Below, in pieces: positions 16,547 to 43,496 of a DNA stretch of 64,000 bases. The position numbers and the translations under genes are program-made. The stretch is taken from positions 248,001 through 312,000 of the IMG/VR virus record IMGVR_UViG_3300023174_000036. The stretch is one strand, 5' to 3'. The notes under the pieces were generated by a model that was not told where the DNA came from, did not search any database, and saw only the letters and a program-made list of their open reading frames with translations. Position 1 is the first letter of the stretch, and every line of letters starts with the position of its first letter.

Positions 16547-16575
16547 ATTATACAGATAGTTTGTGGAAATGTCAA
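16547..16575 (-). promoter_or_regulatory. Consensus sigma70 promoter TTGACA-N17-TATAAT
   Basis: Perfect consensus. Confidence 0.85.
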
Positions 16576-17256: not shown

Positions 17257-17893
17257 CTGTCTTTATTACACCAGTTATACTTTTAATATGTTCTTCATAT
17301 TTTGATTCTATTGCAAATAACAAATGAACTCTGTCCGAATTTCCATCATTGTACACACTGTGAATGTCTCTAGTGTCACACAAATATGCTTGTCCTGGTT
17401 GATCAAGTGGTTGATAACCATTCCATGTTAACCATTTAGCATCCTTGCTGGTGTATATTGGAACATGAACTCTGATTAAGTAATCTTCGTCTTTGTGCGG
17501 AACAATATGCGCACCCGGCACAAACACAGTTAAACTAACTTGTTTGGCATATGGACATATTTCCATCAGTTTTTTGATTATGCCAAACACCATAGGTGTT
17601 TGTTTTTCAGTTGCCAAATGTTCTGAACCGTACACAAAGTCCTTGTGTATATTGGTCCATGGCACTACTTTTTTGTTCTCACTCAGTATTTCAGGAACAG
17701 TGATAGCCCAACCAGATGCATTGCGTTTTTTGTTATATTGATTATTAAAATTATAGATGTCATCTCGAATATCCCCGGGGTTATCCATGTAAGACCAATT
17801 GTATTCTTGGTACGATAATCTAAGTTCGTCGTAGTAAGAACGCAGTTGATTTAAATCAATTTGGAAGTTTAAACGTTCAACAGAATCTTTCAT
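17249..17893 (-). CDS. Asp/Asn beta-hydroxylase-type 2OG-Fe(II) oxygenase
   Basis: PGAHIVPHKD...RVHVPI...IHSVYN...RVHL. Confidence 0.85.
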   Translation of the reverse strand: MKDSVERLNFQIDLNQLRSYYDELRLSYQEYNWSYMDNPGDIRDDIYNFNNQYNKKRNASGWAITVPEILSENKKVVPWTNIHKDFVYGSEHLATEKQTPMVFGIIKKLMEICPYAKQVSLTVFVPGAHIVPHKDEDYLIRVHVPIYTSKDAKWLTWNGYQPLDQPGQAYLCDTRDIHSVYNDGNSDRVHLLFAIESKYEEHIKSITGVIKTDE

Positions 17894-17899
17894 GATAAT

Positions 17900-19792
17900 T
17901 TAAAATTGTACTACTGACCCTAAAATTCTCCGCTCAGCCAATAACAAATTTCCATAAGTGTATTGGTTTGACCGTGTAACATCTTCGTAGAATTCTCTTT
18001 CGTCTTTATATAAATCAAAAGATATCTTTTTAATAAAACCTCTAGAAGTATTCAATCGCTTTGCACTGTAAATTATATTTCCTTCGTTATACACTAACGA
18101 CGGCGTGACACCTTTTTCAACAAACCATTTTTCAACAATAGGTCCAAGATTTTCATAATGTTTGAAATATTCCACAATAAAATAAATGAATCTATGTACC
18201 TGTGGCCCATCGTTGTTTAACCATGTTAAATTATGAAATGTCTCATTTATCTCGTCAGACACGAGTTCATCCAGATGTTTTTCAAAATGAGTGAATGATT
18301 CTAAACTAGCTAATTTTAACAACGGATAGCATTCATTATAAAACTGTCTTAAGAAATCTCCAAATTTTATATTTTTTATTGTTAACAACTGGTTAATAGA
18401 TTTCCGATAGACTCCACTTTGATTAAAGAAAATATATAGTGCATATGCAGTTGTGAATTCTTTATAGTCACTTCTTGTAAATGTACCACCTTCAACAACA
18501 ATTTCACTAGGAATACCATCAGGTGCCTGGTCAGCACGTTTGAGAGCTGTTTTAATACCCCATTTGGCTCTGTATTCTTTTTCATAACTTTCAGCTTCAG
18601 GTAACAGGTACCATTCATATGCTCGCACTAATATTTGTTTTTCGTACGGTATATTAAATTCATTGTACCATGTATCCAACGTGGTACCTGGAAGTCCCAT
18701 AATGATTTCAATAGTGGCTTCGTAACCAAACCCTGTTCGGAGGTAATCTGCTAATTCGAAATGCTCATTGGCTCGTAAGTCTGTGCGCTTGATGTTCTCC
18801 AATATTTCAGGAGTAAACGACTGTTGAGATATCTTATATGCATAAGACAATTTATTAACAGCCTCAATAGTAAAGATACGCTTTAAATAATCAAAGTGTT
18901 TGTTAGTTTTAGCATATCCGCCGTATTGCACATTTGGAAATCGATCTTTTGGATAATTTTGTTTTCTATCCGCAATGTATTGTACTATTTCAACATCGCG
19001 TTCGCCGTTAATTCCAAAATTAGCATCGCACACGTACACACTGCTGATATTATAACTCAGCAATATGTCTAAATCTTTTTTGACACAATCCAAATCTTTT
19101 AGAATTACTTTGGTGCCGATGCCGCCACCCCAATCACAAAATGTGCATTCGTAAGGACAACCCCTAGTTGTTTCAATTTTGCTGTGTAATGTTGGATTTT
19201 CTGAATTTGCATAGTAGTAATTGACATATTCTTGTATGTAATCTTTCTGCGATTCAAAAGCAGAAAAGTTCCATTTGAAATCTCGTTTGTAAGATGCTTT
19301 TGGACTACGCAACATCATGGAACGATCTTTGCTAGGATAAACCATTTGTTCTACAGTGTTCCAATTGATAGTATTTTCATCTGTTAAATTATCTAGTATA
19401 TCAGCAATAGCAATCTCGCCATATACTTCGCTGGGTAAACTTGCATCAATAAACCAATTTTTCTGAAACCAGTCTGCATGATGTTTAAAATATTGGTGGG
19501 GACCGCCTGTAACAATTATACATTTTGGCCATTGTTGTTTTGCCCATTTCAACAATGCCATTGTTCTATCATAATTCCATACATATAAACTCACGCCTAG
19601 AATATCAGGAGGATTTAATGCCAGCACACGTTTGTTATCTTCTATATCATTATGAACTTCAGAAGTTGGCAATATCCAATTGTACTTTTCAGGATGGTTG
19701 CCATACAATTCATAAAATGTTTTTGCACTGGGCCATAATACCGGGATAAAATCATTCCAGCCAGTTAGTGATAAAAGTTGTATGTTTTTCAT
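17900..19792 (-). CDS. B12-binding-domain radical SAM protein
   Basis: ILGVSLYVWN...VTGGPH N-terminal domain; TTRGCPYECTFCDW; IMGLPG. Confidence 0.85.
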   Translation of the reverse strand: MKNIQLLSLTGWNDFIPVLWPSAKTFYELYGNHPEKYNWILPTSEVHNDIEDNKRVLALNPPDILGVSLYVWNYDRTMALLKWAKQQWPKCIIVTGGPHQYFKHHADWFQKNWFIDASLPSEVYGEIAIADILDNLTDENTINWNTVEQMVYPSKDRSMMLRSPKASYKRDFKWNFSAFESQKDYIQEYVNYYYANSENPTLHSKIETTRGCPYECTFCDWGGGIGTKVILKDLDCVKKDLDILLSYNISSVYVCDANFGINGERDVEIVQYIADRKQNYPKDRFPNVQYGGYAKTNKHFDYLKRIFTIEAVNKLSYAYKISQQSFTPEILENIKRTDLRANEHFELADYLRTGFGYEATIEIIMGLPGTTLDTWYNEFNIPYEKQILVRAYEWYLLPEAESYEKEYRAKWGIKTALKRADQAPDGIPSEIVVEGGTFTRSDYKEFTTAYALYIFFNQSGVYRKSINQLLTIKNIKFGDFLRQFYNECYPLLKLASLESFTHFEKHLDELVSDEINETFHNLTWLNNDGPQVHRFIYFIVEYFKHYENLGPIVEKWFVEKGVTPSLVYNEGNIIYSAKRLNTSRGFIKKISFDLYKDEREFYEDVTRSNQYTYGNLLLAERRILGSVVQF

Positions 19793-19834
19793 TCAAATAC
19801 TTATCCTTTAAAAGTGGCCTGCCATAAATATTTC

Positions 19835-20506
19835 ATGATTTATATATTTGGTGGAAGTTTTCTTGCTCCTGGAGCGGCTGACAGTTGGATAACGCGACTG
19901 TCTAACAACTATGAGGTGTGCAATCTTGCCAAACAAAACAGTGCTAATCCAAATATATTTTTAACATTTCTATCTGCAAAAGACAAAATGGTTAAAGATG
20001 ATACTGTGATTATTGCATGGGATGATTACATGTTTCCAAATGTTAATAATGTTGACGATATTCCTGCTCGAAAAAGAGACACTGTTATGGGAACATATCT
20101 TGAATATTTTTTCAACAGTGATCTTGCCAAACTTCATTATAACTATTACTTAAATTATGTCAAAGACTATGCTGTTAACAACTCTATAAATTTAATTGTG
20201 TTATGGGCAGTACCAAGTAACTATATTACTACAGATACTTGGGCAAGTCAAGGGCCTTGGAGTTACGATTATCTTAAACCCAATGAATTTCAGTATGCTG
20301 TTAATTTTGATAATGAAATACGACCAGCTCTGATGTATTTTAGTAAAAAAGAACTTGCTGGTATGTCACCCAAAGCACTTGAGAAATATCTAATGGATGA
20401 TCCTCGTCCAAATCATATTAAAGACTTATCTGTGCATGATAAACTTTATTCAGCTGTGGCAGATTTTGTGGATAAAAAACAAACAGGATGTGTTAATTTA
20501 ACATGA
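19835..20506 (+). CDS. SGNH-like hypothetical protein
   Basis: IFGGSF block I-like; C-terminal HI; TAAATA just upstream. Confidence 0.5.
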   Translation: MIYIFGGSFLAPGAADSWITRLSNNYEVCNLAKQNSANPNIFLTFLSAKDKMVKDDTVIIAWDDYMFPNVNNVDDIPARKRDTVMGTYLEYFFNSDLAKLHYNYYLNYVKDYAVNNSINLIVLWAVPSNYITTDTWASQGPWSYDYLKPNEFQYAVNFDNEIRPALMYFSKKELAGMSPKALEKYLMDDPRPNHIKDLSVHDKLYSAVADFVDKKQTGCVNLT

Positions 20507-21165
20507 ACATATTAATATGCGGAGACAGTTTTGCCGCCGACTGGACAGTTAAATATTCTGGCCAAGGATGGCCAAATTTATTAGCACAGGAGTTTGCTGT
20601 GACTAATCTAGCACAAGCCGGTTGTAGTGAATACAAAATTCTCAAACAATTGGAATCAGTTGATTTAGCTGTGTATGATAAAATTGTCATTTCGCATACC
20701 AGTCCTTATAGGATTTATATCAAAAAACATCCTATACACTACAACGATCCTCTGCACAAAAATTGTGATTTAATCTATACAGATATAAAAGAACATGTAC
20801 TAAAAGATCAAACATTACAACCTATGGTTGACTATTTTGAAAATCATTTTGATTTTGAACATGCAAAATACATGCATACTTTGTTGTGTGAAAAGATAAT
20901 AAAATTATTGGAACCAGTACAAGATCGTGTGTTGCATATTTCCAATATAGATTGGGAAGACTTGTATCAATTTTCAAACATGGTTAATTTTTCTTATTTG
21001 TTTGAAACAAATAGGGGATTGATGAACCATTTTGATTTGGAGGGCAATCAAATTGTATTTAATAGACTCAAAAATTTATTGCAATTGGTTGCGGGGCTTG
21101 GATTTGAACCAAGGATGGCAATGGCTTATGAGACCACGCTGGTGACCGGACCCTCCCCGCGATAA
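20503..21165 (+). CDS. SGNH-like hypothetical protein
   Basis: ICGDSFAAD, NLAQAGCS, C-terminal NH; 3' end runs antisense through a tRNA. Confidence 0.6.
   Translation: MNILICGDSFAADWTVKYSGQGWPNLLAQEFAVTNLAQAGCSEYKILKQLESVDLAVYDKIVISHTSPYRIYIKKHPIHYNDPLHKNCDLIYTDIKEHVLKDQTLQPMVDYFENHFDFEHAKYMHTLLCEKIIKLLEPVQDRVLHISNIDWEDLYQFSNMVNFSYLFETNRGLMNHFDLEGNQIVFNRLKNLLQLVAGLGFEPRMAMAYETTLVTGPSPR
21086..21161 (-). tRNA. tRNA-Met(CAT), initiator-like (C1xA72) with atypical D arm
   Basis: CGCGGGG/CCCCGCA-A-CCA, loop CT-CAT-AA. Confidence 0.8.
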
Positions 21166-21176
21166 CTTATAGTGGT

Positions 21177-21803
21177 TTATGTTGCAATGTCGTAATCTAA
21201 ATTGCCAGCAATACATATCCTATACTCGTCGCTGGTATAAAACGGATGAACGCTATGTGACATCCTTGATGGAAACATAATCATCCTACCTTCCCAACTA
21301 TTATCAACTGGCATGGCATTTAATTGCACTTGACCTAACACATCTGTGTAATGTATATTGAATGAAGGACCTGTTATTGATGTTTTTTCCGATAAAGTAT
21401 TGTGATTTAATTCGTCTGCCATCATAAATGGTACTCGCAACCAGATTACAAAACTAAGTATTCCTTCATGAAAGTGTGCAGACATAAATTCTGTTTTTTC
21501 TTGAAAATTCACCCAACATTTTGTTATCTTTAATTTTCGATTAGTATTCAAATCTCTATAATTAAATGTTGATTTAAACTCGTTCGTTAATGGAATTATT
21601 TTTGACTCTAGATAACTTAAACAATCTATTATTGCAAATTCTTTTTTTACATTGCCGGCATGAAAATGATTTACAAAACTAGCATTCTCGCTATTGAGAA
21701 TAGAATTAACTTCTTTCCACAGAGGTTTTAATTCATCATCTGAAAGCGAGTTTCCTAAAATACCTATATTGGGAAAATGTAGTTGTAAACTTTGATCTAA
21801 CAT
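21177..21803 (-). CDS. 2OG-Fe(II) oxygenase (phage TIGR02466-like)
   Basis: CWVN...HFH...MFPSRMSHSV...RICIAGN. Confidence 0.8.
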   Translation of the reverse strand: MLDQSLQLHFPNIGILGNSLSDDELKPLWKEVNSILNSENASFVNHFHAGNVKKEFAIIDCLSYLESKIIPLTNEFKSTFNYRDLNTNRKLKITKCWVNFQEKTEFMSAHFHEGILSFVIWLRVPFMMADELNHNTLSEKTSITGPSFNIHYTDVLGQVQLNAMPVDNSWEGRMIMFPSRMSHSVHPFYTSDEYRICIAGNLDYDIAT

Positions 21804-21861
21804 TTAAAATCCTTCTACTTGTAAAAATTAATTCCTTATGTTTTTACTTATCAAGTAAATT

Positions 21862-21938
21862 TGGTCGGAGTACAAGGATTCGAACCTTGGACCCCCTGGT
21901 CCCAAACCAGGTGCGCTACCAGACTGCGCTACACTCCG
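21862..21938 (-). tRNA. tRNA-Pro(TGG)
   Basis: Cloverleaf, CCA. Confidence 0.95.
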
Positions 21939-22177
21939 AATTGTTTCTTTCTAATCTTCATTCCAACATAAGTGCCACAAAATGCGCCTGCCATTGCTGG
22001 AATAATTAGCCAGTGATTGGTTGTGTAATTTATAACGGCTACACTTCCTAAAATATAGCAGGCTACACTCCATCCGCTGGCTTTTAATACTTGTTCGTAT
22101 TGTATACATCTCAGATAGTATGTGTAAACAATATCAAGTAAAAAAATTGCAAAAAATGTTGTTATGTAATCTATCAT
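21929..22177 (-). CDS. Small membrane protein
   Basis: Three hydrophobic segments. Confidence 0.65.
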   Translation of the reverse strand: MIDYITTFFAIFLLDIVYTYYLRCIQYEQVLKASGWSVACYILGSVAVINYTTNHWLIIPAMAGAFCGTYVGMKIRKKQFGV

Positions 22178-22181
22178 ATCA

Positions 22182-22255
22182 TGGAGCGGGATAAGAGAAT
22201 CGAACTCTTGACCGAAGATTGGAAATCTGCTGTTTTACCATTAAACTAATCCCGC
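22182..22255 (-). tRNA. tRNA-Gly(TCC)
   Basis: Cloverleaf, CCA. Confidence 0.95.
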
Positions 22256-22260
22256 ATACT

Positions 22261-22351
22261 TTATTAGAATACATTTAAGCCTTTTTCATCACGCTGATGG
22301 TGGCCGGTCCTTGCTACTCAAACTATGTTCAAGCTAAATGTACTTTAATAA
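22261..22351 (-). ncRNA. Stem-capped small RNA A (UUUGAGUAG-CAAGGACCGGCCA motif)
   Basis: Long terminal stem; motif shared with element B at 24274-24406. Confidence 0.5.
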
Positions 22352-22352
22352 A

Positions 22353-22554
22353 GTGTCCGGCTACTCACACCACATGAGCCCCGGACTGAGCGGTTACTCT
22401 GTCCACGTTCTTTTCCATTTAGACGGGCAACGTCCCTGCCTTTGTGATTTCTCAAGTCGTTCCTAAAGAGAACCTTGCGGTAGATCCAACGCACCGTACA
22501 GTTATCGTTACTGTAATGACGCACTTTATTAACGTAAAAGTGTAATCCGGGGTC
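22353..22554 (-). ncRNA. Unassigned ~200-nt multibranch structured RNA
   Basis: Closing stem GACCCCGGAT/GTCCGGGGCTC and several internal hairpins; no ORF. Confidence 0.5.
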
Positions 22555-22558
22555 TTTT

Positions 22559-22634
<76 letters not shown>

Positions 22635-22650
22635 AAGCTATTACTTATTT

Positions 22651-22884
22651 TTAAGTAGTACTAGTACTAGCAGTTCCGGTATCGTTAGTTTGATATCCAG
22701 TAGGGCCGTTTCCACGTAGTGCATTTTTATCACGTGTAGGAGTTTTGATAACAATTTCACTACATAACTGAGCATCAATCATCATTCGCTTGTATTGATT
22801 TCGTTGATCAGCAGTTGCGCCTTTCATCAATCCAATCATGCGTTTTGTTGTTTTACTCAGTTTAAATGTCTTGTTTGGTTTCAT
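22651..22884 (-). CDS. Hypothetical protein
   Basis: ORF with AAGG SD between tRNA genes. Confidence 0.65.
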   Translation of the reverse strand: MKPNKTFKLSKTTKRMIGLMKGATADQRNQYKRMMIDAQLCSEIVIKTPTRDKNALRGNGPTGYQTNDTGTASTSTT

Positions 22885-22903
22885 GTTTTACCTTTTAGTT
22901 ATT

Positions 22904-22993
22904 TGGCGGAACGAAAGAGACTCGAACTCTTAAACCGACTTTCGCCGATCGACGGATTAGCAATCCGCTCCAATACCATTATGGGACCGTTCC
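22904..22993 (-). tRNA. tRNA-Ser(GCT)
   Basis: Long variable arm, G73, CCA. Confidence 0.95.
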
Positions 22994-23019
22994 TTGTTCT
23001 TTTACTTATTACTAATACT

Positions 23020-23104
23020 TGGTGCGAGTGGCCGGAATCGAACCGGCACGACCGAAGCCGAGAGATTTTAAGTCTCTTGTGTCTACCTATTTCACCACAC
23101 TCGC
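23020..23104 (-). tRNA. tRNA-Leu(TAA)
   Basis: Long variable arm, CCA. Confidence 0.95.
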
Positions 23105-23108
23105 AATT

Positions 23109-23339
23109 TTAAACTCGTTCTCGCTTTGTTCTGCCAATGCGGCTAGCTTTGTTCCAATTGTAAACAGCACCATCCGGGCATTTACCATTTGCAACAGTGT
23201 CTACACCAAATCGTCCCACTACTTCAAAATCTGGACCTTTAATAGTTACAAATACCCCAACGGCCTTGGCGTATGCCATTGCTTCGTTTAAGGTTATAAA
23301 TCTTTCTAATTCTCTGTCATTACATATAACTTTGTACAT
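23109..23339 (-). CDS. Hypothetical protein (MYKVICNDRE...)
   Basis: ATG just downstream of the 23346-23374 promoter; the longer ORF-track start lies inside tRNA-Trp. Confidence 0.65.
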   Translation of the reverse strand: MYKVICNDRELERFITLNEAMAYAKAVGVFVTIKGPDFEVVGRFGVDTVANGKCPDGAVYNWNKASRIGRTKRERV

Positions 23340-23345
23340 GTTGTT

Positions 23346-23374
23346 ATTATACTCTCTTCTGGTGCTGTTGTCAA
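23346..23374 (-). promoter_or_regulatory. Consensus sigma70 promoter TTGACA-N17-TATAAT
   Basis: Perfect consensus. Confidence 0.85.
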
Positions 23375-23387
23375 CACTTATTTTATA

Positions 23388-23461
23388 TGGCGTACCCTCA
23401 GGGACTCGAACCCCGACCGACAGTTTTGGAGACTGTAATGCTGCCATTACACTAAGGATAC
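23388..23461 (-). tRNA. tRNA-Trp(CCA)
   Basis: Loop CT-CCA-AA, G73, CCA. Confidence 0.95.
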
Positions 23462-24004
23462 ATATTCTTTAAAAATTTCTTCTGCTTGGTTCCAACACAA
23501 TGGTTTGTTATCTTTTATTAATGGAAAAGAAAAACAATACCTTTCAGAATCAACTGCTGATATATTGTGTAACATACCAACATTGACTAAACTTGGTTGT
23601 CCTACTTGGGCCGAATATACTAGCTCGCAATCCTCTTCCTCTGCTAGTATATAATCAGTTCCTGTTGGAGTTTTTAGACATTTTAATTTACTTGGATCTT
23701 TACAAACAAACCAATTCATTTTTGATGGTGTATTGCAATACACAAAATTAATTTTTACATGATTGTCAAAATCTTCATCGTCCAAATGAATTGGTAGTTT
23801 ATTGTATTCGCCCTCATTGGCTGGATTTGATTTTAAATGAAATAGCTCTGCTTTACCAATTTCTATTTGTAGTGATGACAACCAGTCTATCAATTCTTTA
23901 TTGATTAAACTTTTATCGTACATCGATATTACCGGAGCGTTTTCCAGAAAAACTGGCATAAATTTAACCGGAATATTTAAGTTATGATGGAATGTATTTT
24001 TCAT
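23447..24004 (-). CDS. Hypothetical protein, possible 2OG/cupin fold
   Basis: IHLD...HNI...RY pattern. Confidence 0.5.
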   Translation of the reverse strand: MKNTFHHNLNIPVKFMPVFLENAPVISMYDKSLINKELIDWLSSLQIEIGKAELFHLKSNPANEGEYNKLPIHLDDEDFDNHVKINFVYCNTPSKMNWFVCKDPSKLKCLKTPTGTDYILAEEEDCELVYSAQVGQPSLVNVGMLHNISAVDSERYCFSFPLIKDNKPLCWNQAEEIFKEYVSLV

Positions 24005-24017
24005 ACGTTATTTATTA

Positions 24018-24107
24018 TGGCGGAAGCGGTGAGATTCGAACTCACGGTGCCTTTCGACACGACAGTTTTCAAGACTGTTGCAATAAGCCGGACTCTGCCA
24101 CGCTTCC
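24018..24107 (-). tRNA. tRNA-Ser(TGA)
   Basis: Long variable arm, CCA. Confidence 0.95.
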
Positions 24108-24112
24108 TAATT

Positions 24113-24197
24113 TGGTGCCCCCCAAGAGACTCGAACTCTCACACCTTTCGATACCAGAACCTAAATCTGGCGCGTCTACCAATTTCGCCAAAGGGGC
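24113..24197 (-). tRNA. tRNA-Leu(TAG)
   Basis: Long variable arm, CCA. Confidence 0.95.
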
Positions 24198-24203
24198 AAA
24201 TAG

Positions 24204-24267
24204 AAACACACTAAGGGCAATGCCATCTTACTATCCCAGTATGTCGGGTGTTGCTTAGTGTGCTTTT
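24204..24267 (-). ncRNA. Stem-capped small RNA C
   Basis: AAAGCACACTAAG...CTTAGTGTGTTT terminal stem. Confidence 0.4.
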
Positions 24268-24273
24268 ATATAC

Positions 24274-24406
24274 TTCCATATAGGTGCTCTCTGCGGCGCT
24301 TGAATCCTCGGTAGCCCTTCTCTTCATGGCCGGTCCTTGTACATGGTCGACATTGACAAGTATTTCGGTGTTCCACTGTAGCTACTCAAAGAGCACGTAT
24401 ATGGAA
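24274..24406 (-). ncRNA. Stem-capped small RNA B (UUUGAGUAGC...CAAGGACCGGCCA motif)
   Basis: Stem TTCCATATACGTGCTCT/AGAGCACCTATATGGAA overlapping tRNA-Glu CCA; motif shared with A. Confidence 0.5.
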
Positions 24407-24476
24407 GAGCCAAGGGGAGTCGAACCCCTCTTCTCAGGATGAAAACCTGATGTCCTAACCGATAGACGATGGCTCC
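24402..24476 (-). tRNA. tRNA-Glu(TTC) copy 1
   Basis: Cloverleaf, loop TT-TTC-AT, CCA. Confidence 0.9.
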
Positions 24477-24527
24477 ATATGTAATTTTAATTTTTAATGA
24501 ACGAGACTAATTGCTTAGTATGTGACT

Positions 24528-24556
24528 ATTATATAACAACAATATAAGTTAGTCAA
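24528..24556 (-). promoter_or_regulatory. Sigma70-like promoter TTGACT-N17-TATAAT within tRNA array
   Basis: Direct motif match. Confidence 0.75.
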
Positions 24557-24564
24557 CCTTTATC

Positions 24565-24639
24565 TGGCCGGCCATGCAGGAATCGAACCCACACCCTCTG
24601 TTTCGAAGACAGAGATGATATCCATTTCACCAATGGCCG
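24565..24639 (-). tRNA. tRNA-Arg(TCG)
   Basis: Loop CT-TCG-AA, CCA. Confidence 0.9.
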
Positions 24640-24653
24640 TAATATATATTTAC

Positions 24654-24728
24654 TGGTCCGGCTAGCAGGAATCGAACCCACATTCATGAGGTAGAAGCTC
24701 ATTGTACTATCCATTGTACTATAGCCAG
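24654..24728 (-). tRNA. tRNA-Arg(TCT)
   Basis: Loop CT-TCT-AC, CCA. Confidence 0.9.
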
Positions 24729-24729
24729 C

Positions 24730-24810
24730 TGGTACCCCAGGCGGGATTTGAACCCGCATCTAAATTTCTCCTTTTGAGAGAGACGACTTTGCCAATTTGT
24801 CTACTGGGGC
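24730..24810 (-). tRNA. tRNA-Leu(CAA)
   Basis: Loop CT-CAA-AA, CCA. Confidence 0.9.
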
Positions 24811-24816
24811 ATTGTT

Positions 24817-24892
24817 TGGTGCAACCTCCAGGAATCGAACCTGGTTCAACGGTTCTTCAGACCGCCGCTATGACCACATCAGCTAAAGTTGC
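24817..24892 (-). tRNA. tRNA-Phe(GAA)
   Basis: Cloverleaf, CCA. Confidence 0.95.
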
Positions 24893-24894
24893 AT

Positions 24895-24986
24895 TGGTAC
24901 CAGCGGAGGGGATCGAACCCTCTCAAGAACGCTAATCTGGCGCTAAAAGTCTTATAAGGACTCTCTGACTACCAAGTCTCGCTGGC
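24895..24986 (-). tRNA. Atypical tRNA with TAT anticodon (Ile by anticodon), long variable arm, reduced D arm
   Basis: GCCAGCG/CGCTGGT-A-CCA, loop CT-TAT-AA, 92 nt. Confidence 0.75.
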
Positions 24987-24994
24987 ATTAAAAT

Positions 24995-25070
24995 TGGGGT
25001 GTTAGATGGGGAACGATCCCATACTATCGCTTTCACAGAGCAATGTGCAGACCACTACACTACTAACACC
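24995..25070 (-). tRNA. tRNA-His(GTG)
   Basis: G-1:C73, loop CT-GTG-AA, T loop GATCG variant. Confidence 0.9.
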
Positions 25071-25075
25071 ATAGA

Positions 25076-25149
25076 TGGCACCCGGACTAGGGATCGAACC
25101 TAGGCTAACAGAGTCAAAGTCTGTTGTGCTACCATTACACAATCCGGGA
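25076..25149 (-). tRNA. tRNA-Gln(TTG)
   Basis: Cloverleaf, CCA. Confidence 0.95.
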
Positions 25150-25327
25150 ATAAATATTTGTGTGAAGACTTACGAACACATAACACCGCAAGGGTTACAT
25201 TTTCATCTTTGTTTATACGAAGGTGTATGCTGTGTCATGGTACAGGATGTGTACGACAATACATATTTTGAACTACAGTACTTCACTGATGTTAACAAAG
25301 CATTGCGCTTTATCAATAACTTATAAA

Positions 25328-25401
25328 TGGAGCGGGTAGCGAGAATCGAACTCGCGAATAAACCTTGGCAAGGTTTCAGGTTACCATTACATCATACCCG
25401 C
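25328..25401 (-). tRNA. tRNA-Gly(GCC)
   Basis: Cloverleaf, U73, CCA. Confidence 0.95.
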
Positions 25402-25660
25402 ATAAGAAATTAGTAAAAAGCTCTGAGAAGTTTTGGTCCGCACTCAAGCGAAACATGGCTACCCGCGGTTCACAGCCGCGCCCTACTTGTCTAGCAAACA
25501 TGGAGTATCACTTACTTTCGAGGATCTCCCGGACTGTAATCCTGATCCACCACCCGGTTGAAGTGCAGTTTATAACTGCAAAATCATTTGAGGCTTCCGA
25601 CCTTTGATGATTACTCTTGCGAGACTTCTCGATACCTTGAGCCTTTTACTAATTGCTTAT
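25402..25660 (-). ncRNA. Unassigned ~255-nt multibranch structured RNA
   Basis: ~22-bp interrupted closing stem (AATTAGTAAAA/TTTTACTAATT), nested GAGAAGT/ACTTCTC, GNRA-capped hairpins. Confidence 0.55.
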
Positions 25661-26268
25661 GAAAATTCTGGACGTTTAAAATTTATATTAAACGAAATAC
25701 TTATACGTTCATCATCTGTGTAATTTGCAGGAACACCGTGATTTAACCAGCCCGGAAACAAAATAAATTTACCAATCTTAGGTTCGTAAGATACGTTGTT
25801 TGGAAGATGTTCAAGCAAATATGTTGAAAACTGCGGAACTGGATTCATAAAATTTATGCTGCCGTCATCGCCATTTGTTCTGTAATAATAAACACCTGCA
25901 ATGTCTACACTGCCATGATTGTGTGTATGTGCAAATTCATTTTTTCCAGTATTGGTCATCCAAGATTGTATAATTCTAAATTCTTGTATCTTGCTCACTG
26001 GCACGTCTAGCATTCGCATGTACTCAAACACATGAAACTTCAAAGCGTCAATAAACGCAGTGGTTTGATAGTCCAACAGTAGATTGGATTCGAACGATGT
26101 GTCTGACAATTTGTGTGTGTTTGGCAACCATTGCTCGTTGTGTTTGAACGAATCCTTTGCTTTCAAATCCGCAACTACCCGATCTAATTCTGATTGTACT
26201 GCAATTAATTCGTCGCCCTCAATCACACTGTTATAAATTGGTGTTGCAAAGTATCCATGAACGCTCAT
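25657..26268 (-). CDS. 2OG-Fe(II) oxygenase (phage TIGR02466-like)
   Basis: SWMT...HTHNH...LFPGWLNHGV...RISISFN. Confidence 0.85.
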   Translation of the reverse strand: MSVHGYFATPIYNSVIEGDELIAVQSELDRVVADLKAKDSFKHNEQWLPNTHKLSDTSFESNLLLDYQTTAFIDALKFHVFEYMRMLDVPVSKIQEFRIIQSWMTNTGKNEFAHTHNHGSVDIAGVYYYRTNGDDGSINFMNPVPQFSTYLLEHLPNNVSYEPKIGKFILFPGWLNHGVPANYTDDERISISFNINFKRPEFS

Positions 26269-26304
26269 ACATATCCTTTATTTTAGAATATTTATTTTTA
26301 TGCT

Positions 26305-26379
26305 TGGTGGTAATAGTAGGATTTGAACCTACACCTTGCTCCGTATGAAGGAGGTGCACTACCGTTATGCTATATTACC
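26305..26379 (-). tRNA. tRNA(CAT): elongator Met or Ile2
   Basis: Loop TT-CAT-AC, G1-C72, CCA; identity not decidable by eye. Confidence 0.85.
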
Positions 26380-26380
26380 A

Positions 26381-26481
26381 TATGTAAACACACTAAGGTG
26401 TATTAAGTATGCGGGCTATGCCTATCGCAGTGACTGGGATACCAAACCTGATCTTTTTACAGATTAAAGTATGTTTACATA
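26381..26481 (-). ncRNA. Stem-capped small RNA D
   Basis: TATGTAAACATACT...AGTGTGTTTACATA terminal stem between two tRNAs. Confidence 0.4.
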
Positions 26482-26556
26482 TGGTAGGGGCACAGGGAAT
26501 CGAACCCTGATAGACTGGTTAAAAGCCAGCTATTCTAGCCGTTGAATTATACCCCC
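26482..26556 (-). tRNA. tRNA-Lys(TTT)
   Basis: Loop CT-TTT-AA, CCA. Confidence 0.95.
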
Positions 26557-26560
26557 ATAT

Positions 26561-26636
26561 TGGTCCACTCAGTCGGATTCGAACCGACACCTCATTGATT
26601 AAGAGTCAAGTGCGCTACCATTAACGCTACAAGTGG
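26561..26636 (-). tRNA. tRNA-Lys(CTT)
   Basis: Loop CT-CTT-AA, CCA. Confidence 0.95.
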
Positions 26637-26747
26637 TTGGTCGTAATTAAATTGATTTAATGTGCCAACCAGGACCAATACGGGGTCTAGATTGACACTA
26701 ACGTTTAGCACGTTTCATGTCGTTCTCCTTATGAACATTTTTAAAAA

Positions 26748-26804
26748 CAGGATGCTTATTTTTCAATTAAAAGTTGAATTTTTGAATTTGCTGTTCGCAT
26801 CCTA
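26748..26804 (-). ncRNA. Y-like ncRNA copy 3 (57 nt, ACAGCAA family; Lys(UUU)-like anticodon arm)
   Basis: TAGGATGC-GA-ACAGCAA...TTCAA-CTTTTAA-TTGAA...GCATCCTG. Confidence 0.65.
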
Positions 26805-26808
26805 AACT

Positions 26809-26883
26809 TGGTACTCCGAACGGGTTTCGATCCCGCTTCTCCAACTTGAAAGGCTGGCGTCCTAGCCACTAGACGACCGGAGT
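26809..26883 (-). tRNA. tRNA-Glu(TTC) copy 2
   Basis: Loop CT-TTC-AA, CCA; sequence divergent from copy 1. Confidence 0.9.
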
Positions 26884-26888
26884 ATATT

Positions 26889-26963
26889 TGGTAGCCAATG
26901 ATGGGAACGATCCATCGACCCTCGCCTTATCAAGACGATGCTCTACCACTGAGCTAATTGGCT
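26889..26963 (-). tRNA. tRNA-Ile(GAT)
   Basis: Cloverleaf, CCA. Confidence 0.95.
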
Positions 26964-26968
26964 ATATT

Positions 26969-27044
26969 TGGTGGAGGTGACAGGGATCGAACCTGCGACA
27001 TCTTGCTTGCAAAGCAAACGCTCTCCCAACTGAGCTACACCCCC
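26969..27044 (-). tRNA. tRNA-Ala(TGC)
   Basis: G3:U70, CCA. Confidence 0.95.
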
Positions 27045-27052
27045 ATATTATA

Positions 27053-27802
27053 TTATTTGATGGAGTTTATTTTAACTAGACCAAAAAATTTCAAAATTAA
27101 AATTATCCCATACGCCAGATCAAATTCCCACCATTTTTCTGAAAATTTAGCTTTAGTGGTATCATCATGATGGTTGGCAGCCAACTCTTCGCCGACGTAC
27201 AGCAGTCCTATAGGAAACATGTTCCGAGAACGATCAGCGCCTTTGGCTGGCCTATTTCGATATCCTATTGTGTGACTTAGATAGTTATGCGCACGAAGAT
27301 GGAACTGTGTATATACAAACAAGATAACACCAAATACCACTCCCCATATACCAAACGCAATTAAAGCCAAAATTCCTGCTATTGGATATCTATATTTAGA
27401 ATACTTTACTAATTGATGTTCTAGTTTATCAGTGTATACAGGCACATCGTTACCCCATTTTTCAATTTCCTCAGGAGTCAAATAGTACGCTGGAGTAGCT
27501 GGAGATGGCTCTTGAGTGAAAAACAAATCTATTTTACTGAAGTAAATTGGACTGTGTGGATCATCCGGTGTGTCAGAAGTAGCATGATGCTTTCTATGAC
27601 CCGCAACAAATGCACGGACAGAATCACCAGGATACCAAAAACCTATAAACCATAACCATGTTCTAGAAAAATATTCTAATCTAGTACTTACTATAGAAAC
27701 TGATCGATGGGCCAATATTCTATGAATATAAATTGCATAAACATTGCAAGTTATGAAAAAAATTGTTAGATAACACCACAACATCCACTGATAATCAAGC
27801 AT
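27053..27802 (-). CDS. Membrane fatty acid (acyl-CoA/acyl-lipid) desaturase
   Basis: His boxes HRILAH, HRKHH, NHH; DPHSP; FDL. Confidence 0.85.
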   Translation of the reverse strand: MLDYQWMLWCYLTIFFITCNVYAIYIHRILAHRSVSIVSTRLEYFSRTWLWFIGFWYPGDSVRAFVAGHRKHHATSDTPDDPHSPIYFSKIDLFFTQEPSPATPAYYLTPEEIEKWGNDVPVYTDKLEHQLVKYSKYRYPIAGILALIAFGIWGVVFGVILFVYTQFHLRAHNYLSHTIGYRNRPAKGADRSRNMFPIGLLYVGEELAANHHDDTTKAKFSEKWWEFDLAYGIILILKFFGLVKINSIK

Positions 27803-27862
27803 GTATTGCTCCTTAAATATATTGAATATTTATTGATAACTCAGTATGCTTGATTACTTGAT

Positions 27863-27938
27863 TGGCTCCACAGCCTGGGCTCGAACCAGGGACCAAATGA
27901 TTAACAGTCATCTACTCTACCAACTGAGCTACTGCGGA
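27863..27938 (-). tRNA. tRNA-Asn(GTT)
   Basis: Cloverleaf, CCA. Confidence 0.95.
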
Positions 27939-27945
27939 ATAAACT

Positions 27946-28020
27946 TGGCGGTCCCAAGGAGGATCGAACTCCTAACCTCGGCGTGACAAGCCGACATTAT
28001 AACCATTTAACTATGGGACC
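27946..28020 (-). tRNA. tRNA-Asp(GTC)
   Basis: Cloverleaf, CCA. Confidence 0.95.
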
Positions 28021-28026
28021 TAAATT

Positions 28027-28112
28027 TGGTGGAGTATCCTGGGATCGAACCAGGCGTGCCATTACGACGGCGGATTTACAGTCCACTGCATCACCATTGA
28101 TGCTTCTACTCC
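28027..28112 (-). tRNA. tRNA-Tyr(GTA)
   Basis: Long variable arm, CCA. Confidence 0.95.
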
Positions 28113-30154: not shown

Positions 30155-30225
30155 AATATAATTCCTTTTAAAATAATGACATTTGTCATGCTTATAGTAT
30201 ACATTAGTACTATCTATAGGTCAAG

Positions 30226-30250
30226 AAAAAAGGCACTCGAAAGTGCCTTC
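30226..30250 (-). terminator. Terminator after tmRNA
   Basis: AAGGCACT-TTCG-AGTGCCTTTTTT. Confidence 0.85.
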
Positions 30251-30592
30251 TTTGGTTATTGGTTTACAAGGCTAACCAGCCCCGGAGTTGCGGTTTCTTA
30301 GGCCGCCATTGCAAAGTCTGCATCATTAGCTGAAAAAGCTACTGAAGCTGGAACTTTGAAATACTCGAATGTATTTGCGTTTGCATTTACGAGTTTTGCT
30401 TGATTTACAGTCATCGCCTACTGAGTTGCCGTCTCCATTATCTCACCCTGTCGAAACCATGGCTGGCCCATCATAAACACATTAATGAGGAATCTAGGCG
30501 GATTGCAAGACCCAATGATTAATATGTTTATGGTGGACCAGGTGGGAGTCGAACCCACGTCCAGAATGCCTTCACTTTGAAGGGATTACAAC
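30251..30592 (-). ncRNA. ssrA: Circularly permuted (two-piece) tmRNA
   Basis: Acceptor piece with T arm and CCA at 30531-30592; hairpin intervening segment 30470-30530; coding piece starts GGGCCAG at 30469 (G3:U70); tag ORF 30384-30298. Confidence 0.9.
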
Positions 30593-30608
30593 TATCTCTT
30601 TAACCACA

Positions 30609-30812
30609 TTACTGTGGTTGAATATTTGCTGCCTGCAAGCCTTTTTGACCTTGTACTACATCAAATGATACTGATTGATTCTCTTGCAGAACTTTGAATC
30701 CTGATGTCTGAATCGCTGAGTAGTGAGCAAACAAATCCTCACCACCGTTGTCTGGAGTAATAAACCCAAAACCTTTGGTTTCATTAAACCATTTTACTTT
30801 ACCTGTTGCCAT
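30609..30812 (-). CDS. cspA: Cold-shock protein
   Basis: [15 protein letters not shown] (RNP1), DLFAHYS (RNP2). Confidence 0.95.
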
Positions 30813-30963
30813 TTACTTATTTTCCTATTAAAACACTATTATAGTGCCTTGTATTTAGTATAGCAAGTAAAATGGTACTTTAAAAGCTAAATATTATTGT
30901 AGGAACAAGTCGGGAGCGAATCGATTTTTAGCAGTAAACCCTTGAATAAAATGGAGCGAATCA

Positions 30964-42124: not shown

Positions 42125-42656
42125 GATAAAGATCCTTCATCATTTTAATAGCGTATTCAAACGCCACACGAGCTTCGTCTCCAAGGTCGTCCGTGAGTTC
42201 TGCACGAATTGCGGCTTTGAGTGCATCAGCATCTTCAAACTGATAAAACTTACCGCTAGTATAAGGCACTTGTTTGGCAATAATTTGTCCGCCAAACAAG
42301 TCGCCCATGTGTCTGCAATACAAGTGTGCTTTGACCAAATGCTTACGTGCTGGATCGTTACACAATGCATGTAGATACGTTTGATACTCTAATGTGGCCG
42401 GAGTCAGATAGTGATAACTGCCATCGTCTAATTCATTAAAGTCTTGAACAATTGCCCGTAGTCTTGGTAATGTTGGCATGTTGTCAAAAAAACCTTGACG
42501 CTTGCCGTACCATTCGATTGGGTCGTAGATTGCTAGAAGATTGTACAAATAGTTTCTGTAGTCTGCTTTTTGAATTTTGCCACTTAGTAGTAACTGTGCA
42601 AATTTGGTTGTTTCTGCCTCATGATGGAGGTCTTTGGTAATTTCTCGTAAGCTCAT
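42114..42656 (-). CDS. Heme oxygenase
   Basis: T..LHHEAE, AHLYCRHMGDLFGGQII, FYQF. Confidence 0.9.
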   Translation of the reverse strand: MSLREITKDLHHEAETTKFAQLLLSGKIQKADYRNYLYNLLAIYDPIEWYGKRQGFFDNMPTLPRLRAIVQDFNELDDGSYHYLTPATLEYQTYLHALCNDPARKHLVKAHLYCRHMGDLFGGQIIAKQVPYTSGKFYQFEDADALKAAIRAELTDDLGDEARVAFEYAIKMMKDLYHGE

Positions 42657-42955
42657 TCTTCTTCCAATTTGATTTGGAGAGGATGATTATTAGTACGAGC
42701 TTGATTGGTTGCTTCAACTGCTTTGGCTTCAGCAATTTCAAAACTATAAACACCAGCAATTCCGCTACCAGTTTCATGCACTTCTGCCATCACATGATGT
42801 GCAGTATCTGGATTATGTTTAAAAATTTCAATCAATACCGAAACAACAAAATCCATTGGAGTTGAATCATCGTTGAGCAGGATAACCTTCCATCTTTTAG
42901 GTTCGCTTACTACTACTTTAATTTTCTCATCTAGTTGAATATCCGTGCCTGCCAT
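42653..42955 (-). CDS. clpS: ClpS N-degron adaptor
   Basis: WKVILLNDDSTPMDFVV...VHETG.GIAG. Confidence 0.95.
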   Translation of the reverse strand: MAGTDIQLDEKIKVVVSEPKRWKVILLNDDSTPMDFVVSVLIEIFKHNPDTAHHVMAEVHETGSGIAGVYSFEIAEAKAVEATNQARTNNHPLQIKLEEE

Positions 42956-42970
42956 TTAGTTCTCCAAAGT

Positions 42971-42990
42971 TGGGGGAGTTTCCTCCCCCA
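42971..42990 (-). terminator. Hairpin after hsp20
   Basis: TGGGGGAG-TTTC-CTCCCCCA. Confidence 0.6.
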
Positions 42991-43003
42991 TTGTTATTTA
43001 CAA

Positions 43004-43429: not shown

Positions 43430-43482
43430 AATTTTCTCCTTTAAATAAGCAAGAACCTCGCAGGACCCCGAAGGCGTCCTGC
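43430..43482 (-). promoter_or_regulatory. ROSE-like RNA thermometer upstream of hsp20
   Basis: UUCG-capped 5' hairpin, then UUCUUGCUU pairing with AAGGAGAA with bulged G. Confidence 0.7.
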
Positions 43483-43496
43483 ATGTTTATATTATA

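What the first reader, a model, noticed from the sequence alone, without database searches (positions are those of the whole stretch)
30251..30592. Phage two-piece tmRNA with an unusually long 28-aa tag
Seen: permuted order (T arm/CCA piece, hairpin spacer, GGGCCAG coding piece) with G3:U70. The resume context UAAAU-GCA gives ANANTFEYFKVPASVAFSANDADFAMAA*. The last 10 residues look like a normal ~10-aa tag and are preceded by an 18-aa aromatic-rich extension. Established: permuted tmRNAs occur in Alphaproteobacteria, some Cyanobacteria and some Betaproteobacteria, and the C-terminal AA is the ClpX degron. Inference: the extension may reroute rescued proteins to other adaptors or proteases (phage ClpS, DnaK and Hsp20 are nearby). 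No smpB is present in the window.
Basis: partly seen in the sequence, partly recalled or inferred. Interest (0 to 1): 0.65.

Follow-up and report, generated by a model that had tools for sequence, protein, structure and literature searches.

The report
Jumbo-phage two-piece tmRNA, extended tag
A 356-kb phage carries its own split ribosome-rescue RNA (tmRNA) whose degradation tag is a normal host-type 10-residue tag with 18 extra residues in front, a design shared by a whole clade of related giant phages that also carry their own Clp protease parts.

Summary

The refuting scenario, resumption at the internal GCU, is unlikely. The first GCA lies at the same distance from the acceptor strand and PK1, and in the same UAAAU context, as the resume codon of 10-aa relatives. 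The extra 54 nt sit inside the ORF.

The long tag is not a one-off. 33 of 36 long-tag (>=21 aa) tmRNAs in the tree form one supported clade. Their frame stays open, their indels are whole codons, and they share an N-terminal ANAxTF[EDK][YF] motif. The coding pattern for that motif was not found in any tmRNA of 185,579 bacterial species genomes. All 29 cellular relatives sampled have 10-aa tags.

The phage has no SmpB, SspB or Lon. It does encode ClpS, Hsp20 and DnaK in the window, and ClpP and a ClpA-type unfoldase elsewhere. ClpS and an upstream csp gene track the long-tag clade.

What the extension does (rerouting, a better handle for proteases, or nothing) remains inference. This is a new variant of a known kind, of moderate interest.

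The parts
30838..30866 (-). Promoter-like site (TTGCTA, 17 nt, TATAAT) upstream of csp. It is the likely start of a csp-tmRNA transcription unit.
   Evidence: Consensus scan, 10 of 12 matches. This is a consensus match only.
30609..30812 (-). Cold-shock protein gene (CSD domain, 67 aa). It ends 16 nt before the tmRNA match.
   Evidence: Pfam PF00313, 103 bits. A csp gene lies just upstream on the same strand in 24 of 45 long-tag loci but in only 1 of 123 loci that ARAGORN called short-tagged, and that one (L003) proved to be a long-tag tmRNA.
30531..30593 (-). Acceptor piece. It holds the 5' strand of helix 2, the T arm (stem-loop 30542-30558), the 3' acceptor strand CUGGUCC, and ACCA ending at 30531.
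   Evidence: Rfam RF04321 alignment, model positions 1-63; sequence.
30470..30530 (-). Intervening spacer, expected to be removed during maturation. It forms a roughly 14-bp AU-rich hairpin that extends the acceptor stem.
   Evidence: Direct reading. Rfam treats it as the variable insert between CCA and the GGG start.
30226..30469 (-). Coding piece. It holds the 5' acceptor strand GGGCCAG (G3:U), the 3' strand of helix 2, the PK1 hairpin (30408-30423), the tag ORF, the H5 hairpin, a downstream hairpin and the terminator.
   Evidence: Rfam RF04321 and RF01850 alignments; fold; family consensus fold with compensatory changes in H5 and the next hairpin.
30298..30384 (-). Tag reading frame: 28 codons plus UAA. 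The resume codon GCA is at 30384-30382, preceded by UAAAU.
   Evidence: ARAGORN. The position is the same as in 10-aa relatives, about 71 nt after the acceptor-strand TTCGAC. 146 of 149 relatives have U at -5 and A at -4.
30331..30384 (-). First 18 codons (ANANTFEYFKVPASVAFS). Codons 1-2 are shared with ordinary tags. The rest is the clade-specific in-frame extension.
   Evidence: Alignment places the extra 42-54 nt after GCA AAC G. Across 31 unique long ORFs, none has an in-frame stop, while 31 and 28 of them have stops in the other two frames. No conserved helix was found here.
30301..30330 (-). Last 10 codons (ANDADFAMAA), equivalent to a complete host-type ssrA tag.
   Evidence: All 29 cellular tmRNAs sampled from one betaproteobacterial order encode ANDxx[FY]A[LI]AA. 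RF01850 aligns its tag to this segment.
30290..30306 (-). H5-like hairpin (GCGG ... CCGC) with the stop codon in its loop.
   Evidence: Conserved in 29 of 29 family members, with UA/AU/GC compensatory changes.
30222..30249 (-). Intrinsic terminator: an 8-bp GC-rich hairpin followed by a T run on the minus strand. The next promoter-like site (TTGACC, 17 nt, TATACT) follows at 30224-30196.
   Evidence: (hairpin listed) and sequence. RF01850 aligns its terminal hairpin here.
42653..45425 (-). Context: the proteostasis cluster ClpS (42653-42955), Hsp20 (43004-43429) and DnaK (43497-45425), 12-15 kb from the tmRNA.
   Evidence: The phage ClpS keeps the NDD...H N-degron pocket motif in alignment with solved ClpS structures.
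16105..28112 (-). Context: an array of 27 ARAGORN tRNA genes plus 2 further tRNA matches found by Rfam only. The tmRNA lies at the end of this array.

Best explanation
SHOWN BY SEQUENCE ANALYSIS
- This is an intact, beta-type, circularly permuted tmRNA gene of a 356-kb jumbo phage. It lies directly downstream of a cold-shock protein gene and ends in an intrinsic terminator.
- Its tag frame starts at the first GCA (30384) and encodes 28 residues, or 29 counting the alanine carried by the tmRNA.
- The last 10 residues are a full host-type ssrA tag. The 18 in front include a clade-specific in-frame insertion.
- This design arose essentially once. It has been kept, with whole-codon indels (22-33 aa), through a clade of related aquatic jumbo phages.

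INFERRED FROM ESTABLISHED tmRNA BIOLOGY
- The precursor is cut by host tRNA-processing enzymes into an acceptor piece and a coding piece.
- Host AlaRS charges it through the G3:U pair.
- It works with host SmpB, because the phage has none.
- It rescues ribosomes stalled on broken mRNAs during infection.

INFERRED, WEAKEST STEP
- The C-terminal AMAA end still serves as the ClpX-type degron.
- The extension changes how tagged proteins are handled. It may give AAA+ proteases, including the phage's own ClpA-type unfoldase with ClpP, a long unstructured handle. It may also separate an N-terminal adaptor-like motif (A-A-N-x-x-x-aromatic) from the C-terminal degron.
- I put about 0.95 on the gene being a functional tmRNA, about 0.85 on the 28-aa frame, and about 0.4 on the extension having a proteolysis-related role.
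For: IDENTITY
- ARAGORN and two Rfam models score well above threshold.
- G3:U, the T arm, CCA, PK1 and the H5 hairpin are all present.

FRAME
- The distance from the acceptor-strand TTCGAC to the resume codon is about 71 nt in both 10-aa and 28-aa relatives, with the same AAGCAAA-nnnn-GTAAAT context.
- Long-tag phage, short-tag phage and bacterial two-piece tmRNAs align collinearly up to GCA AAC G, and the extra 42-54 nt follow that point.
- 146 of 149 relatives have U at -5 and A at -4. None of the 18 internal AN[DEA] sites has that context, and 19 of 37 long tags have no internal canonical start at all.
- In E. coli the 5 nt upstream set the frame, and A86 (position -4) is the main determinant (PMC2481249).

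CODING
- In 31 unique long ORFs of 69-96 nt, none has an in-frame stop. 31 and 28 of them have stops in the other two frames.
- Synonymous changes occur in conserved codons.
- L003, which ARAGORN called from an internal site, is open from the canonical site and gives a 27-aa tag of the same family.
- No conserved RNA helix lies in the extension, while the flanking helices covary.

CLADE
- 33 of 36 long tags fall in one supported clade on a tree built without the tag.

PHAGE SPECIFICITY
- The coding pattern for the motif hit no tmRNA in 185,579 species genomes.
- All 29 cellular relatives sampled have 10-aa tags.

CONTEXT
- The phage has no SmpB, SspB or Lon.
- It has ClpS, Hsp20, DnaK, ClpP and a ClpA-type protein.
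- ClpS is present in 12 of 20 long-tag-family records searched, plus this phage, including fragments only 9-23% complete. It is present in 0 of 16 short-tag or unrelated-tag records.
- Over the family cut-off, AAA_2 unfoldases are found in 0 of 11 records carrying short or mid-length tags (or no called tag) that are at least 86% complete. They are found in three unrelated long-tag phages.
- Inserting residues between the SspB-binding and ClpX-binding parts of ssrA strengthens the delivery complex (PMC9963277).
Against: - There is no expression, processing or tagging data.
- pN/pS on the extension is only 0.69. That equals the value for the canonical 10 codons (0.70), but it is not clearly different from one of the shifted frames.
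- ARAGORN and my second viral scan both favour the UAAAU context, so part of the context statistic is circular.
- By E. coli precedent, ClpS lowers ClpA's use of ssrA tags (PMC9382460). A simple 'extension feeds phage ClpAPS' story is therefore not implied.
- Beyond the first 8-9 residues the extension differs a great deal between subfamilies. That argues against one strict binding site.
Confidence: 0.75

Rival explanations
1. Translation resumes at the internal GCU (30330), so the real tag is the ordinary 10-aa ANDADFAMAA. On this view the 54 nt before it are an untranslated insertion between PK1 and the resume codon.
For: The RF01850 beta_tmRNA model aligns its tag consensus to this internal segment and treats 56 nt as an insert. 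The last 10 codons look like a complete host tag. In L003, ARAGORN itself preferred an internal site.
Against: - The internal site has UUUCA upstream, with U rather than A at -4. None of the 18 such internal sites in the family has the UA context.
- It lies 54 nt further from PK1 and the acceptor stem than the resume codon of every short-tag relative.
- An untranslated insert would not need to stay stop-free and in frame across 31 unique sequences with 7 length classes.
- Half of the long tags have no internal canonical start.
Confidence: 0.07
2. The extension is translated but has no function of its own. It would be a tolerated insertion or partial duplication that rides along because only ribosome release and the C-terminal degron matter. 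Conservation of its first codons would then reflect RNA-level needs near the resume codon.
For: [quoted passage not shown]
- The middle of the extension varies widely between subfamilies, and pN/pS is a modest 0.69.
- An invariant small potential hairpin spans the resume codon and codons 3-5.
- Tag length varies continuously (10-14 aa) in other phage tmRNAs.
Against: - The extension has been kept in 33 of 36 long-tag members of one clade through about 25% or more divergence of the RNA. Only one or two short-tag rows lie inside that clade as apparent secondary shortenings.
- The peptide motif is conserved with synonymous codon changes.
- The extension's constraint equals that of the accepted degron codons.
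- Long tags recur in unrelated phage tmRNAs whose genomes also carry Clp-type unfoldases.
Confidence: 0.3
3. The RNA is not a working tagging tmRNA. It would be a decoy that titrates host SmpB, or a decaying copy, as proposed for the TLD-only molecule of mycobacteriophage DS6A.
For: No phage SmpB is present. A TLD-only phage molecule that inhibits tmRNA has been described (PMC4131195).
Against: The gene is complete, with every tmRNA element intact, and both Rfam scores are high. The open tag frame ends in a canonical degron inside H5 and is conserved across dozens of divergent phages.
Confidence: 0.04

Closest known systems
Betaproteobacterial two-piece (permuted) tmRNA, Rfam RF01850 / RF04321
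   Same: It has the same permuted gene order, acceptor stem with G3:U, T arm, helix 2, PK1, UAAAU-GCA resume context, H5 hairpin holding the stop codon, and terminal hairpin. Its last 10 codons match the ANDxxFA[LIM]AA tag of cellular members.
   Different: It is encoded by a phage, with no SmpB gene beside it. It carries 16-18 extra in-frame codons after codon 2-3. All 29 cellular tmRNAs sampled have exactly 10 codons.
Known phage-encoded two-piece tmRNAs (Melnitz, pelagimyophages, phiCbK-like phages, XacN1; Buchholz et al. 2022, PMC9004378)
   Same: It is a virus-borne permuted ssrA gene in an aquatic-type large phage, found among tRNA genes and auxiliary genes. The proposed role is to keep hijacked ribosomes running and to recycle proteins.
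   Different: That survey did not analyse tags. XacN1's tag begins with the same ANANTF motif but is only 12 aa long. No riboswitch was found here. Melnitz's tmRNA is of the alpha type.
Extended tmRNA tags of Mycoplasma/Mesoplasma (about 27 aa, read by Lon; Gur and Sauer 2008; Ge and Karzai 2009, as cited in PMC9382460)
   Same: The tag is about three times the usual length, and there the extra part carries additional protease recognition determinants.
   Different: Mycoplasma tags end in a ...YAFA-type motif and evolved where ClpXP is absent. The phage tag keeps a canonical ...AMAA end and a full host-type 10-mer. The phage also encodes no Lon.
Engineered spaced ssrA tags (for example the DAS+4 type; insertions between the SspB-binding and ClpX-binding parts)
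   Same: Extra residues lie between an N-terminal A-A-N-x-x-x-aromatic element and the C-terminal degron. Such insertions strengthen the SspB-tag-ClpX complex in E. coli (PMC9963277).
   Different: The phage extension is natural and much longer. It is followed by a second complete AND...AA unit. No SspB is encoded by the phage, and the host's adaptor is unknown.

Membership tests
Two-piece (circularly permuted) tmRNA | Permuted gene order: the acceptor piece ending in CCA lies upstream of the coding piece that begins with the 5' acceptor strand. | tested here: met
   ARAGORN flags the gene as permuted. RF04321 matches end to end, positions 1-213, at 136.4 bits against a gathering score of 47.
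Two-piece (circularly permuted) tmRNA | A tRNA-like domain with a 7-bp acceptor stem carrying the G3:U alanine identity pair, a T arm and an encoded CCA. | tested here: met
   GGGCCAG pairs with CUGGUCC, followed by ACCA. The T stem-loop is GUGGG-UUCGACU-CCCAC.
Two-piece (circularly permuted) tmRNA | A resume codon at a fixed distance after PK1, with U at -5 and A at -4. | tested here: met
   UAAAU-GCA lies 23 nt after the PK1 hairpin and about 71 nt after the acceptor-strand TTCGAC, as in 10-aa relatives. The rule comes from PMC2481249.
Two-piece (circularly permuted) tmRNA | A short ORF ending in a hydrophobic ...[LMI]AA degron, with the stop codon in helix 5. | tested here: met
   The tag ends in ...FAMAA, and UAA lies inside the GCGG/CCGC hairpin. 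That helix covaries across the family.
Two-piece (circularly permuted) tmRNA | Maturation into two base-paired RNAs, alanylation, SmpB binding and tagging activity. | not testable with these tools
SmpB is absent from the phage and must come from the unknown host.
Betaproteobacterial subtype (RF01850) | A score above the curated gathering threshold over the full model. | tested here: met
   126.4 bits against a threshold of 84, model positions 1-331, but with a 56-nt insert forced into the tag region.
Betaproteobacterial subtype (RF01850) | A 10-codon tag ANDxx[FY]A[LI]AA. | tested here: not met
   The tag has 28 codons, and only the last 10 fit this pattern. The gene therefore works like this subtype and derives from it, but it is a tag variant.
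Mycoplasma-type extended, Lon-directed tag | A non-canonical C-terminal motif read by Lon, in a setting without ClpXP. | tested here: not met
   The C-terminus is the canonical AMAA. No Lon is found in the phage. The host's proteases are unknown.

The most novel reading that the evidence does not exclude
The extension is a virus-evolved second recognition module. It would turn the host's ssrA tag into a phage-specific degron, so that trans-translation products made during infection are handed preferentially to the phage's own ClpA-type unfoldase and ClpP, or held by phage DnaK and Hsp20. This would escape normal host control by SspB and ClpS and speed up amino-acid recycling. The csp-tmRNA unit, ClpS, ClpA and ClpP would together form a portable viral protein-quality-control system.
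Probability: 0.2. Interest if true: 0.8.

Novelty: new variant of a known kind. Interest (0 to 1): 0.55.

Why it matters
Phage tmRNAs are usually noted in annotations and then ignored. Here a whole clade of giant phages has kept a tag nearly three times the normal length, built as a new N-terminal module followed by an intact host degron. These phages also carry their own Clp adaptor, unfoldase and protease, plus chaperones.

If the extension changes which protease or adaptor sees rescued proteins, this would be the first natural case of a virus re-addressing the bacterial trans-translation tag. It would also supply new orthogonal degrons.

The idea is directly testable with reporter fusions and purified ClpXP and ClpAP. 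If the extension is inert, the finding is simply a well-documented tag variant.

Tried and rejected
- Codon-level selection: pN/pS for the extension is 0.69, against 0.96 and 0.69 in the shifted frames. This is too weak to be decisive, so I rely on frame, stop and indel evidence instead.
- Structured-RNA reading of the extension: two hairpins in the single-sequence fold are not conserved in relatives, and the family consensus fold puts no helix there.
- Bacterial origin of the motif: the genome contigs pattern scan gave 5 hits, all chance matches in coding or rRNA sequence.
- Host inference from tmRNA type: rejected. XacN1 infects Xanthomonas yet carries a beta-type two-piece tmRNA, and only 3 of 151 sampled genomes of the betaproteobacterial order have that type.
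- Placing XacN1 on the tmRNA tree: its branch length is 1.93, so the placement is unreliable.
- Complex prediction was not sent. The tag is shorter than the 30-residue minimum, I make no firm binding claim, and ssrA recognition by ClpA or ClpX happens in the hexamer pore, which a pairwise test would not capture.
- The large protein searches were not needed.

Full report
OBSERVATION

The window is bases 248001-312000 of a 356,312-bp IMG/VR phage record estimated to be 96% complete.

ARAGORN calls a permuted tmRNA at 30207-30623 on the minus strand. Two Rfam models match above their curated thresholds. RF04321 (tmRNA_permuted) scores 136.4 bits at 30298-30593. RF01850 (beta_tmRNA) scores 126.4 bits at 30226-30644.

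Read directly, the gene has, on the minus strand:
- a T arm and 3' acceptor strand ending in ACCA at 30531
- a 61-nt hairpin spacer at 30470-30530
- the 5' acceptor strand GGGCCAG at 30469-30463, which gives G3:U
- helix 2 and a PK1 hairpin at 30408-30423
- UAAAU followed by GCA at 30384
- 28 sense codons, then UAA at 30300-30298 inside a small hairpin
- a further hairpin and an intrinsic terminator at 30230-30249

A cold-shock protein gene (30609-30812, Pfam CSD) ends 16 nt upstream. A promoter-like site precedes it.

WHICH RESUME CODON?

The two Rfam models disagree, and the disagreement is informative. RF04321 aligns its resume codon to the first GCA. RF01850 aligns its 10-codon tag to the internal GCU AAU GAU and forces a 56-nt insert. 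I tested this with relatives.

Two pattern scans of IMG/VR gave 230 loci. ARAGORN run over them found 170 permuted tmRNAs.

In both 10-aa and 28-aa genes, the called resume codon lies about 71 nt after the acceptor-strand TTCGAC and has the same AAGCAAA-nnnn-GTAAAT context.

A MAFFT alignment of long-tag phage, short-tag phage and three bacterial two-piece tmRNAs is collinear up to GCA AAC G. It places the extra 42-54 nt after that point, which is inside the ORF.

146 of 149 unique genes have U at -5 and A at -4. None of the 18 internal AN[DEA] sites has that context; the window's internal site has UUUCA. 19 of the 37 long tags have no internal canonical start at all.

In E. coli the five upstream nucleotides set the frame, and A86 (position -4) is the main determinant. 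Changing it to a pyrimidine abolishes activity (PMC2481249).

Part of the context statistic is circular, because ARAGORN and the pattern both favour that context. The alignment, however, includes loci from the scan on the tRNA-like domain alone and bacterial genes, and it does not depend on that context.

IS THE EXTENSION TRANSLATED?

- There are 31 unique long ORFs of 69-96 nt in seven length classes, all in frame with the conserved ...GCNGCC UAA end. None has an in-frame stop, while 31 and 28 of them have stops in the other two frames.
- Conserved residues show synonymous codon changes such as TTC/TTT and TAT/TAC.
- The window's nearest relative, L003, had been called with a 12-aa tag from an internal site. 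Read from the canonical site it is open and gives a 27-aa tag of the same family. The frame conservation is therefore not produced by ARAGORN's own site choice.
- pN/pS of the extension (0.69) equals that of the accepted last ten codons (0.70), but it is weak evidence on its own.
- RNAalifold on 29 unique family members finds no conserved helix in the extension. H5 and the next hairpin are conserved with compensatory changes.

A FAMILY, NOT A ONE-OFF

On a maximum-likelihood tree built from the tmRNAs with the tag ORF removed, 33 of 36 long-tag genes form one clade (support 95/88). A second tree supports it again at 95/95. This points to a single origin that was retained, with one or two short-tag rows inside the clade (L064 in the first tree, L149 in the second).

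The tags share an N-terminal A-N-A-x-T-F-[EDK]-[YF] start, and many end in a full AN[DE]xx[FY]ALAA unit. 13-aa forms (ANA followed by a full 10-mer; L040, L102) also exist.

In the scan that did not depend on resume context, 12 of 70 permuted tmRNAs have tags of 21 aa or more.

The loci come from phages related to this one, sharing RNR, DnaK and other genes at 70-90% amino-acid identity.

The coding pattern for the motif plus resume context hit no tmRNA in one genome for each of 185,579 bacterial and archaeal species. The five hits were chance matches.

All 29 cellular tmRNAs sampled from a betaproteobacterial order encode 10-aa tags. Only 3 of the 151 genomes sampled have the two-piece form. 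The extension is therefore a phage innovation added in front of a host-type tag.

CONTEXT

The phage has no SmpB, SspB or Lon. It does encode:
- ClpS, Hsp20 and DnaK in the window
- a strong ClpP match at 258.7 bits
- a 758-aa protein with the ClpA architecture: Clp_N, AAA, lid, AAA_2 and D2-small

The phage ClpS keeps the NDD...H pocket motif of solved ClpS proteins.

ClpS was found in 12 of 20 long-tag-family records searched, even in fragments only 9-23% complete, so it is linked to the tmRNA. It was found in 0 of 16 short-tag or unrelated-tag records, ten of them at least 90% complete.

ClpA-size AAA_2 proteins occur in the jumbo clade. Three unrelated long-tag phages (G175, G181, G184; two of them with one-piece tmRNAs) carry AAA_2 proteins of other sizes. 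Over the family cut-off, none was found in the 11 records carrying short or mid-length tags (or no called tag) that are at least 86% complete.

The csp gene sits directly upstream in 24 of 45 long-tag loci, against 1 of 123 loci that ARAGORN called short-tagged. That one locus is L003, which one search showed to be a long-tag member.

These associations are suggestive only. The long-tag phages are kin and have large genomes.

MECHANISM

The shown part is the anatomy and the reading frame.

The part inferred from established tmRNA biology is as follows. Host tRNA enzymes excise the spacer, host AlaRS charges the RNA through G3:U, host SmpB delivers it to stalled ribosomes, and 29 residues are added.

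For the extension, the literature gives these elements:
- SspB reads the first seven tag residues and ClpX reads the C-terminal ALAA.
- SspB blocks ClpAP.
- ClpS lowers ClpA's use of ssrA tags.
- Inserting residues between the two elements strengthens the delivery complex (PMC9963277; PMC9382460).

With the charged alanine, the phage tag starts A-A-N-A-N-T-F, which resembles A-A-N-D-E-N-Y in layout. This is my own comparison, and it is a lead rather than a test.

My best guess, at about 0.4, is that the extension tunes proteolytic handling. It may act as a longer unstructured handle, as an adaptor element spaced further from the degron, or both, possibly in favour of the phage's own ClpA-type machine. 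A neutral, tolerated insertion remains a serious rival at about 0.3.

COMPARISON AND NOVELTY

Phage two-piece tmRNAs are known. Buchholz et al. 2022 counted 53 unique ones, mostly from aquatic phages, and listed XacN1 among them without analysing tags.

XacN1's record does not annotate the gene. ARAGORN and Rfam find it there with a 12-aa tag that starts with the same ANANTF motif.

Extended tags are known in Mycoplasma, where they are read by Lon.

I found no paper in the held library that describes this long-tag phage clade.

I class it as a new variant of a known kind. It meets every testable structural criterion for a beta-type two-piece tmRNA except the 10-codon tag.

LIMITS

There are no expression or biochemical data, and the host is unknown. 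Co-occurrence was not corrected for phylogeny. IMG/VR fragments are incomplete, so absences in them mean little.

Noticed in passing
window 30609-30812 (-) and loci such as L152, L024, L020, L003: A cold-shock protein gene lies immediately upstream of the tmRNA on the same strand in 24 of 45 long-tag loci. Among 123 loci that ARAGORN called short-tagged it does so in only one, L003, which proved to be a long-tag member. This suggests a conserved csp-tmRNA transcription unit.
   Followed up: partly
L271 2298-2718 (Xanthomonas phage XacN1, AP018399.1, about 37201-37621): The cultured jumbo phage XacN1 carries a beta-type two-piece tmRNA that is not annotated in its record. Its 12-aa tag starts with the same ANANTF motif. 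XacN1 could serve as a laboratory system.
   Followed up: partly
L271 3667-4080 and 1144-1302: A GOLLD RNA (Rfam, 227 bits) lies about 1 kb downstream of the XacN1 tmRNA. Two tRNAs with a CTA anticodon (suppressor or Pyl-like) lie upstream. No GOLLD match was found in the window itself.
   Followed up: no
window 16105-28112 (-): An array of 27 ARAGORN tRNAs plus two tRNA matches found by Rfam only (16105-16178, 28030-28112). One of them is an unusually long 92-nt tRNA-Ile(tat) at 24895-24986.
   Followed up: no
window 42114-45425 (-); G000 225633-226175 and about 172638-174914: The phage carries its own proteostasis kit. Heme oxygenase, ClpS, Hsp20 and DnaK lie in a row in the window. ClpP and a 758-aa ClpA-type unfoldase lie elsewhere in the genome.
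   Followed up: yes
window 27053-27802, 34012-34713, 29108-29557, 29702-30154: Auxiliary genes surround the tmRNA: two fatty-acid desaturase homologues, a rubrerythrin, and a YfaZ-like outer-membrane protein with its own promoter-like site.
   Followed up: no
L040, L102, L019: These loci have 13-aa tags built as ANA or ATA followed by a full ANDE[VI][FY]ALAA unit. They look like a minimal version of the 'prefix plus complete tag' design. L040's record (G160) also has a 758-aa ClpA-type gene.
   Followed up: partly
L100, L066, L087, L086, L016, L056: Unrelated phage tmRNAs, several of them one-piece, also encode long tags of 21-31 aa. Some contain an MTF...MAF-type aromatic pattern. Three of their records carry Hsp100/Clp-type AAA+ genes.
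   Followed up: partly
window 30370-30389 (-), and alignment columns 87-106: An invariant potential mini-hairpin (GUA-AA-UGC, loop AAAC, GCA-AA-UAC) spans the resume codon and codons 3-5 in the long-tag family. There is no covariation, so it cannot be judged. It might explain part of the conservation of the first codons.
   Followed up: no
L140, L159, L184, L144 and others: A separate group of viral permuted tmRNAs, on contigs of up to about 183 kb, has 13-aa tags ending in ...RLAA, with an arginine before the LAA degron.
   Followed up: no
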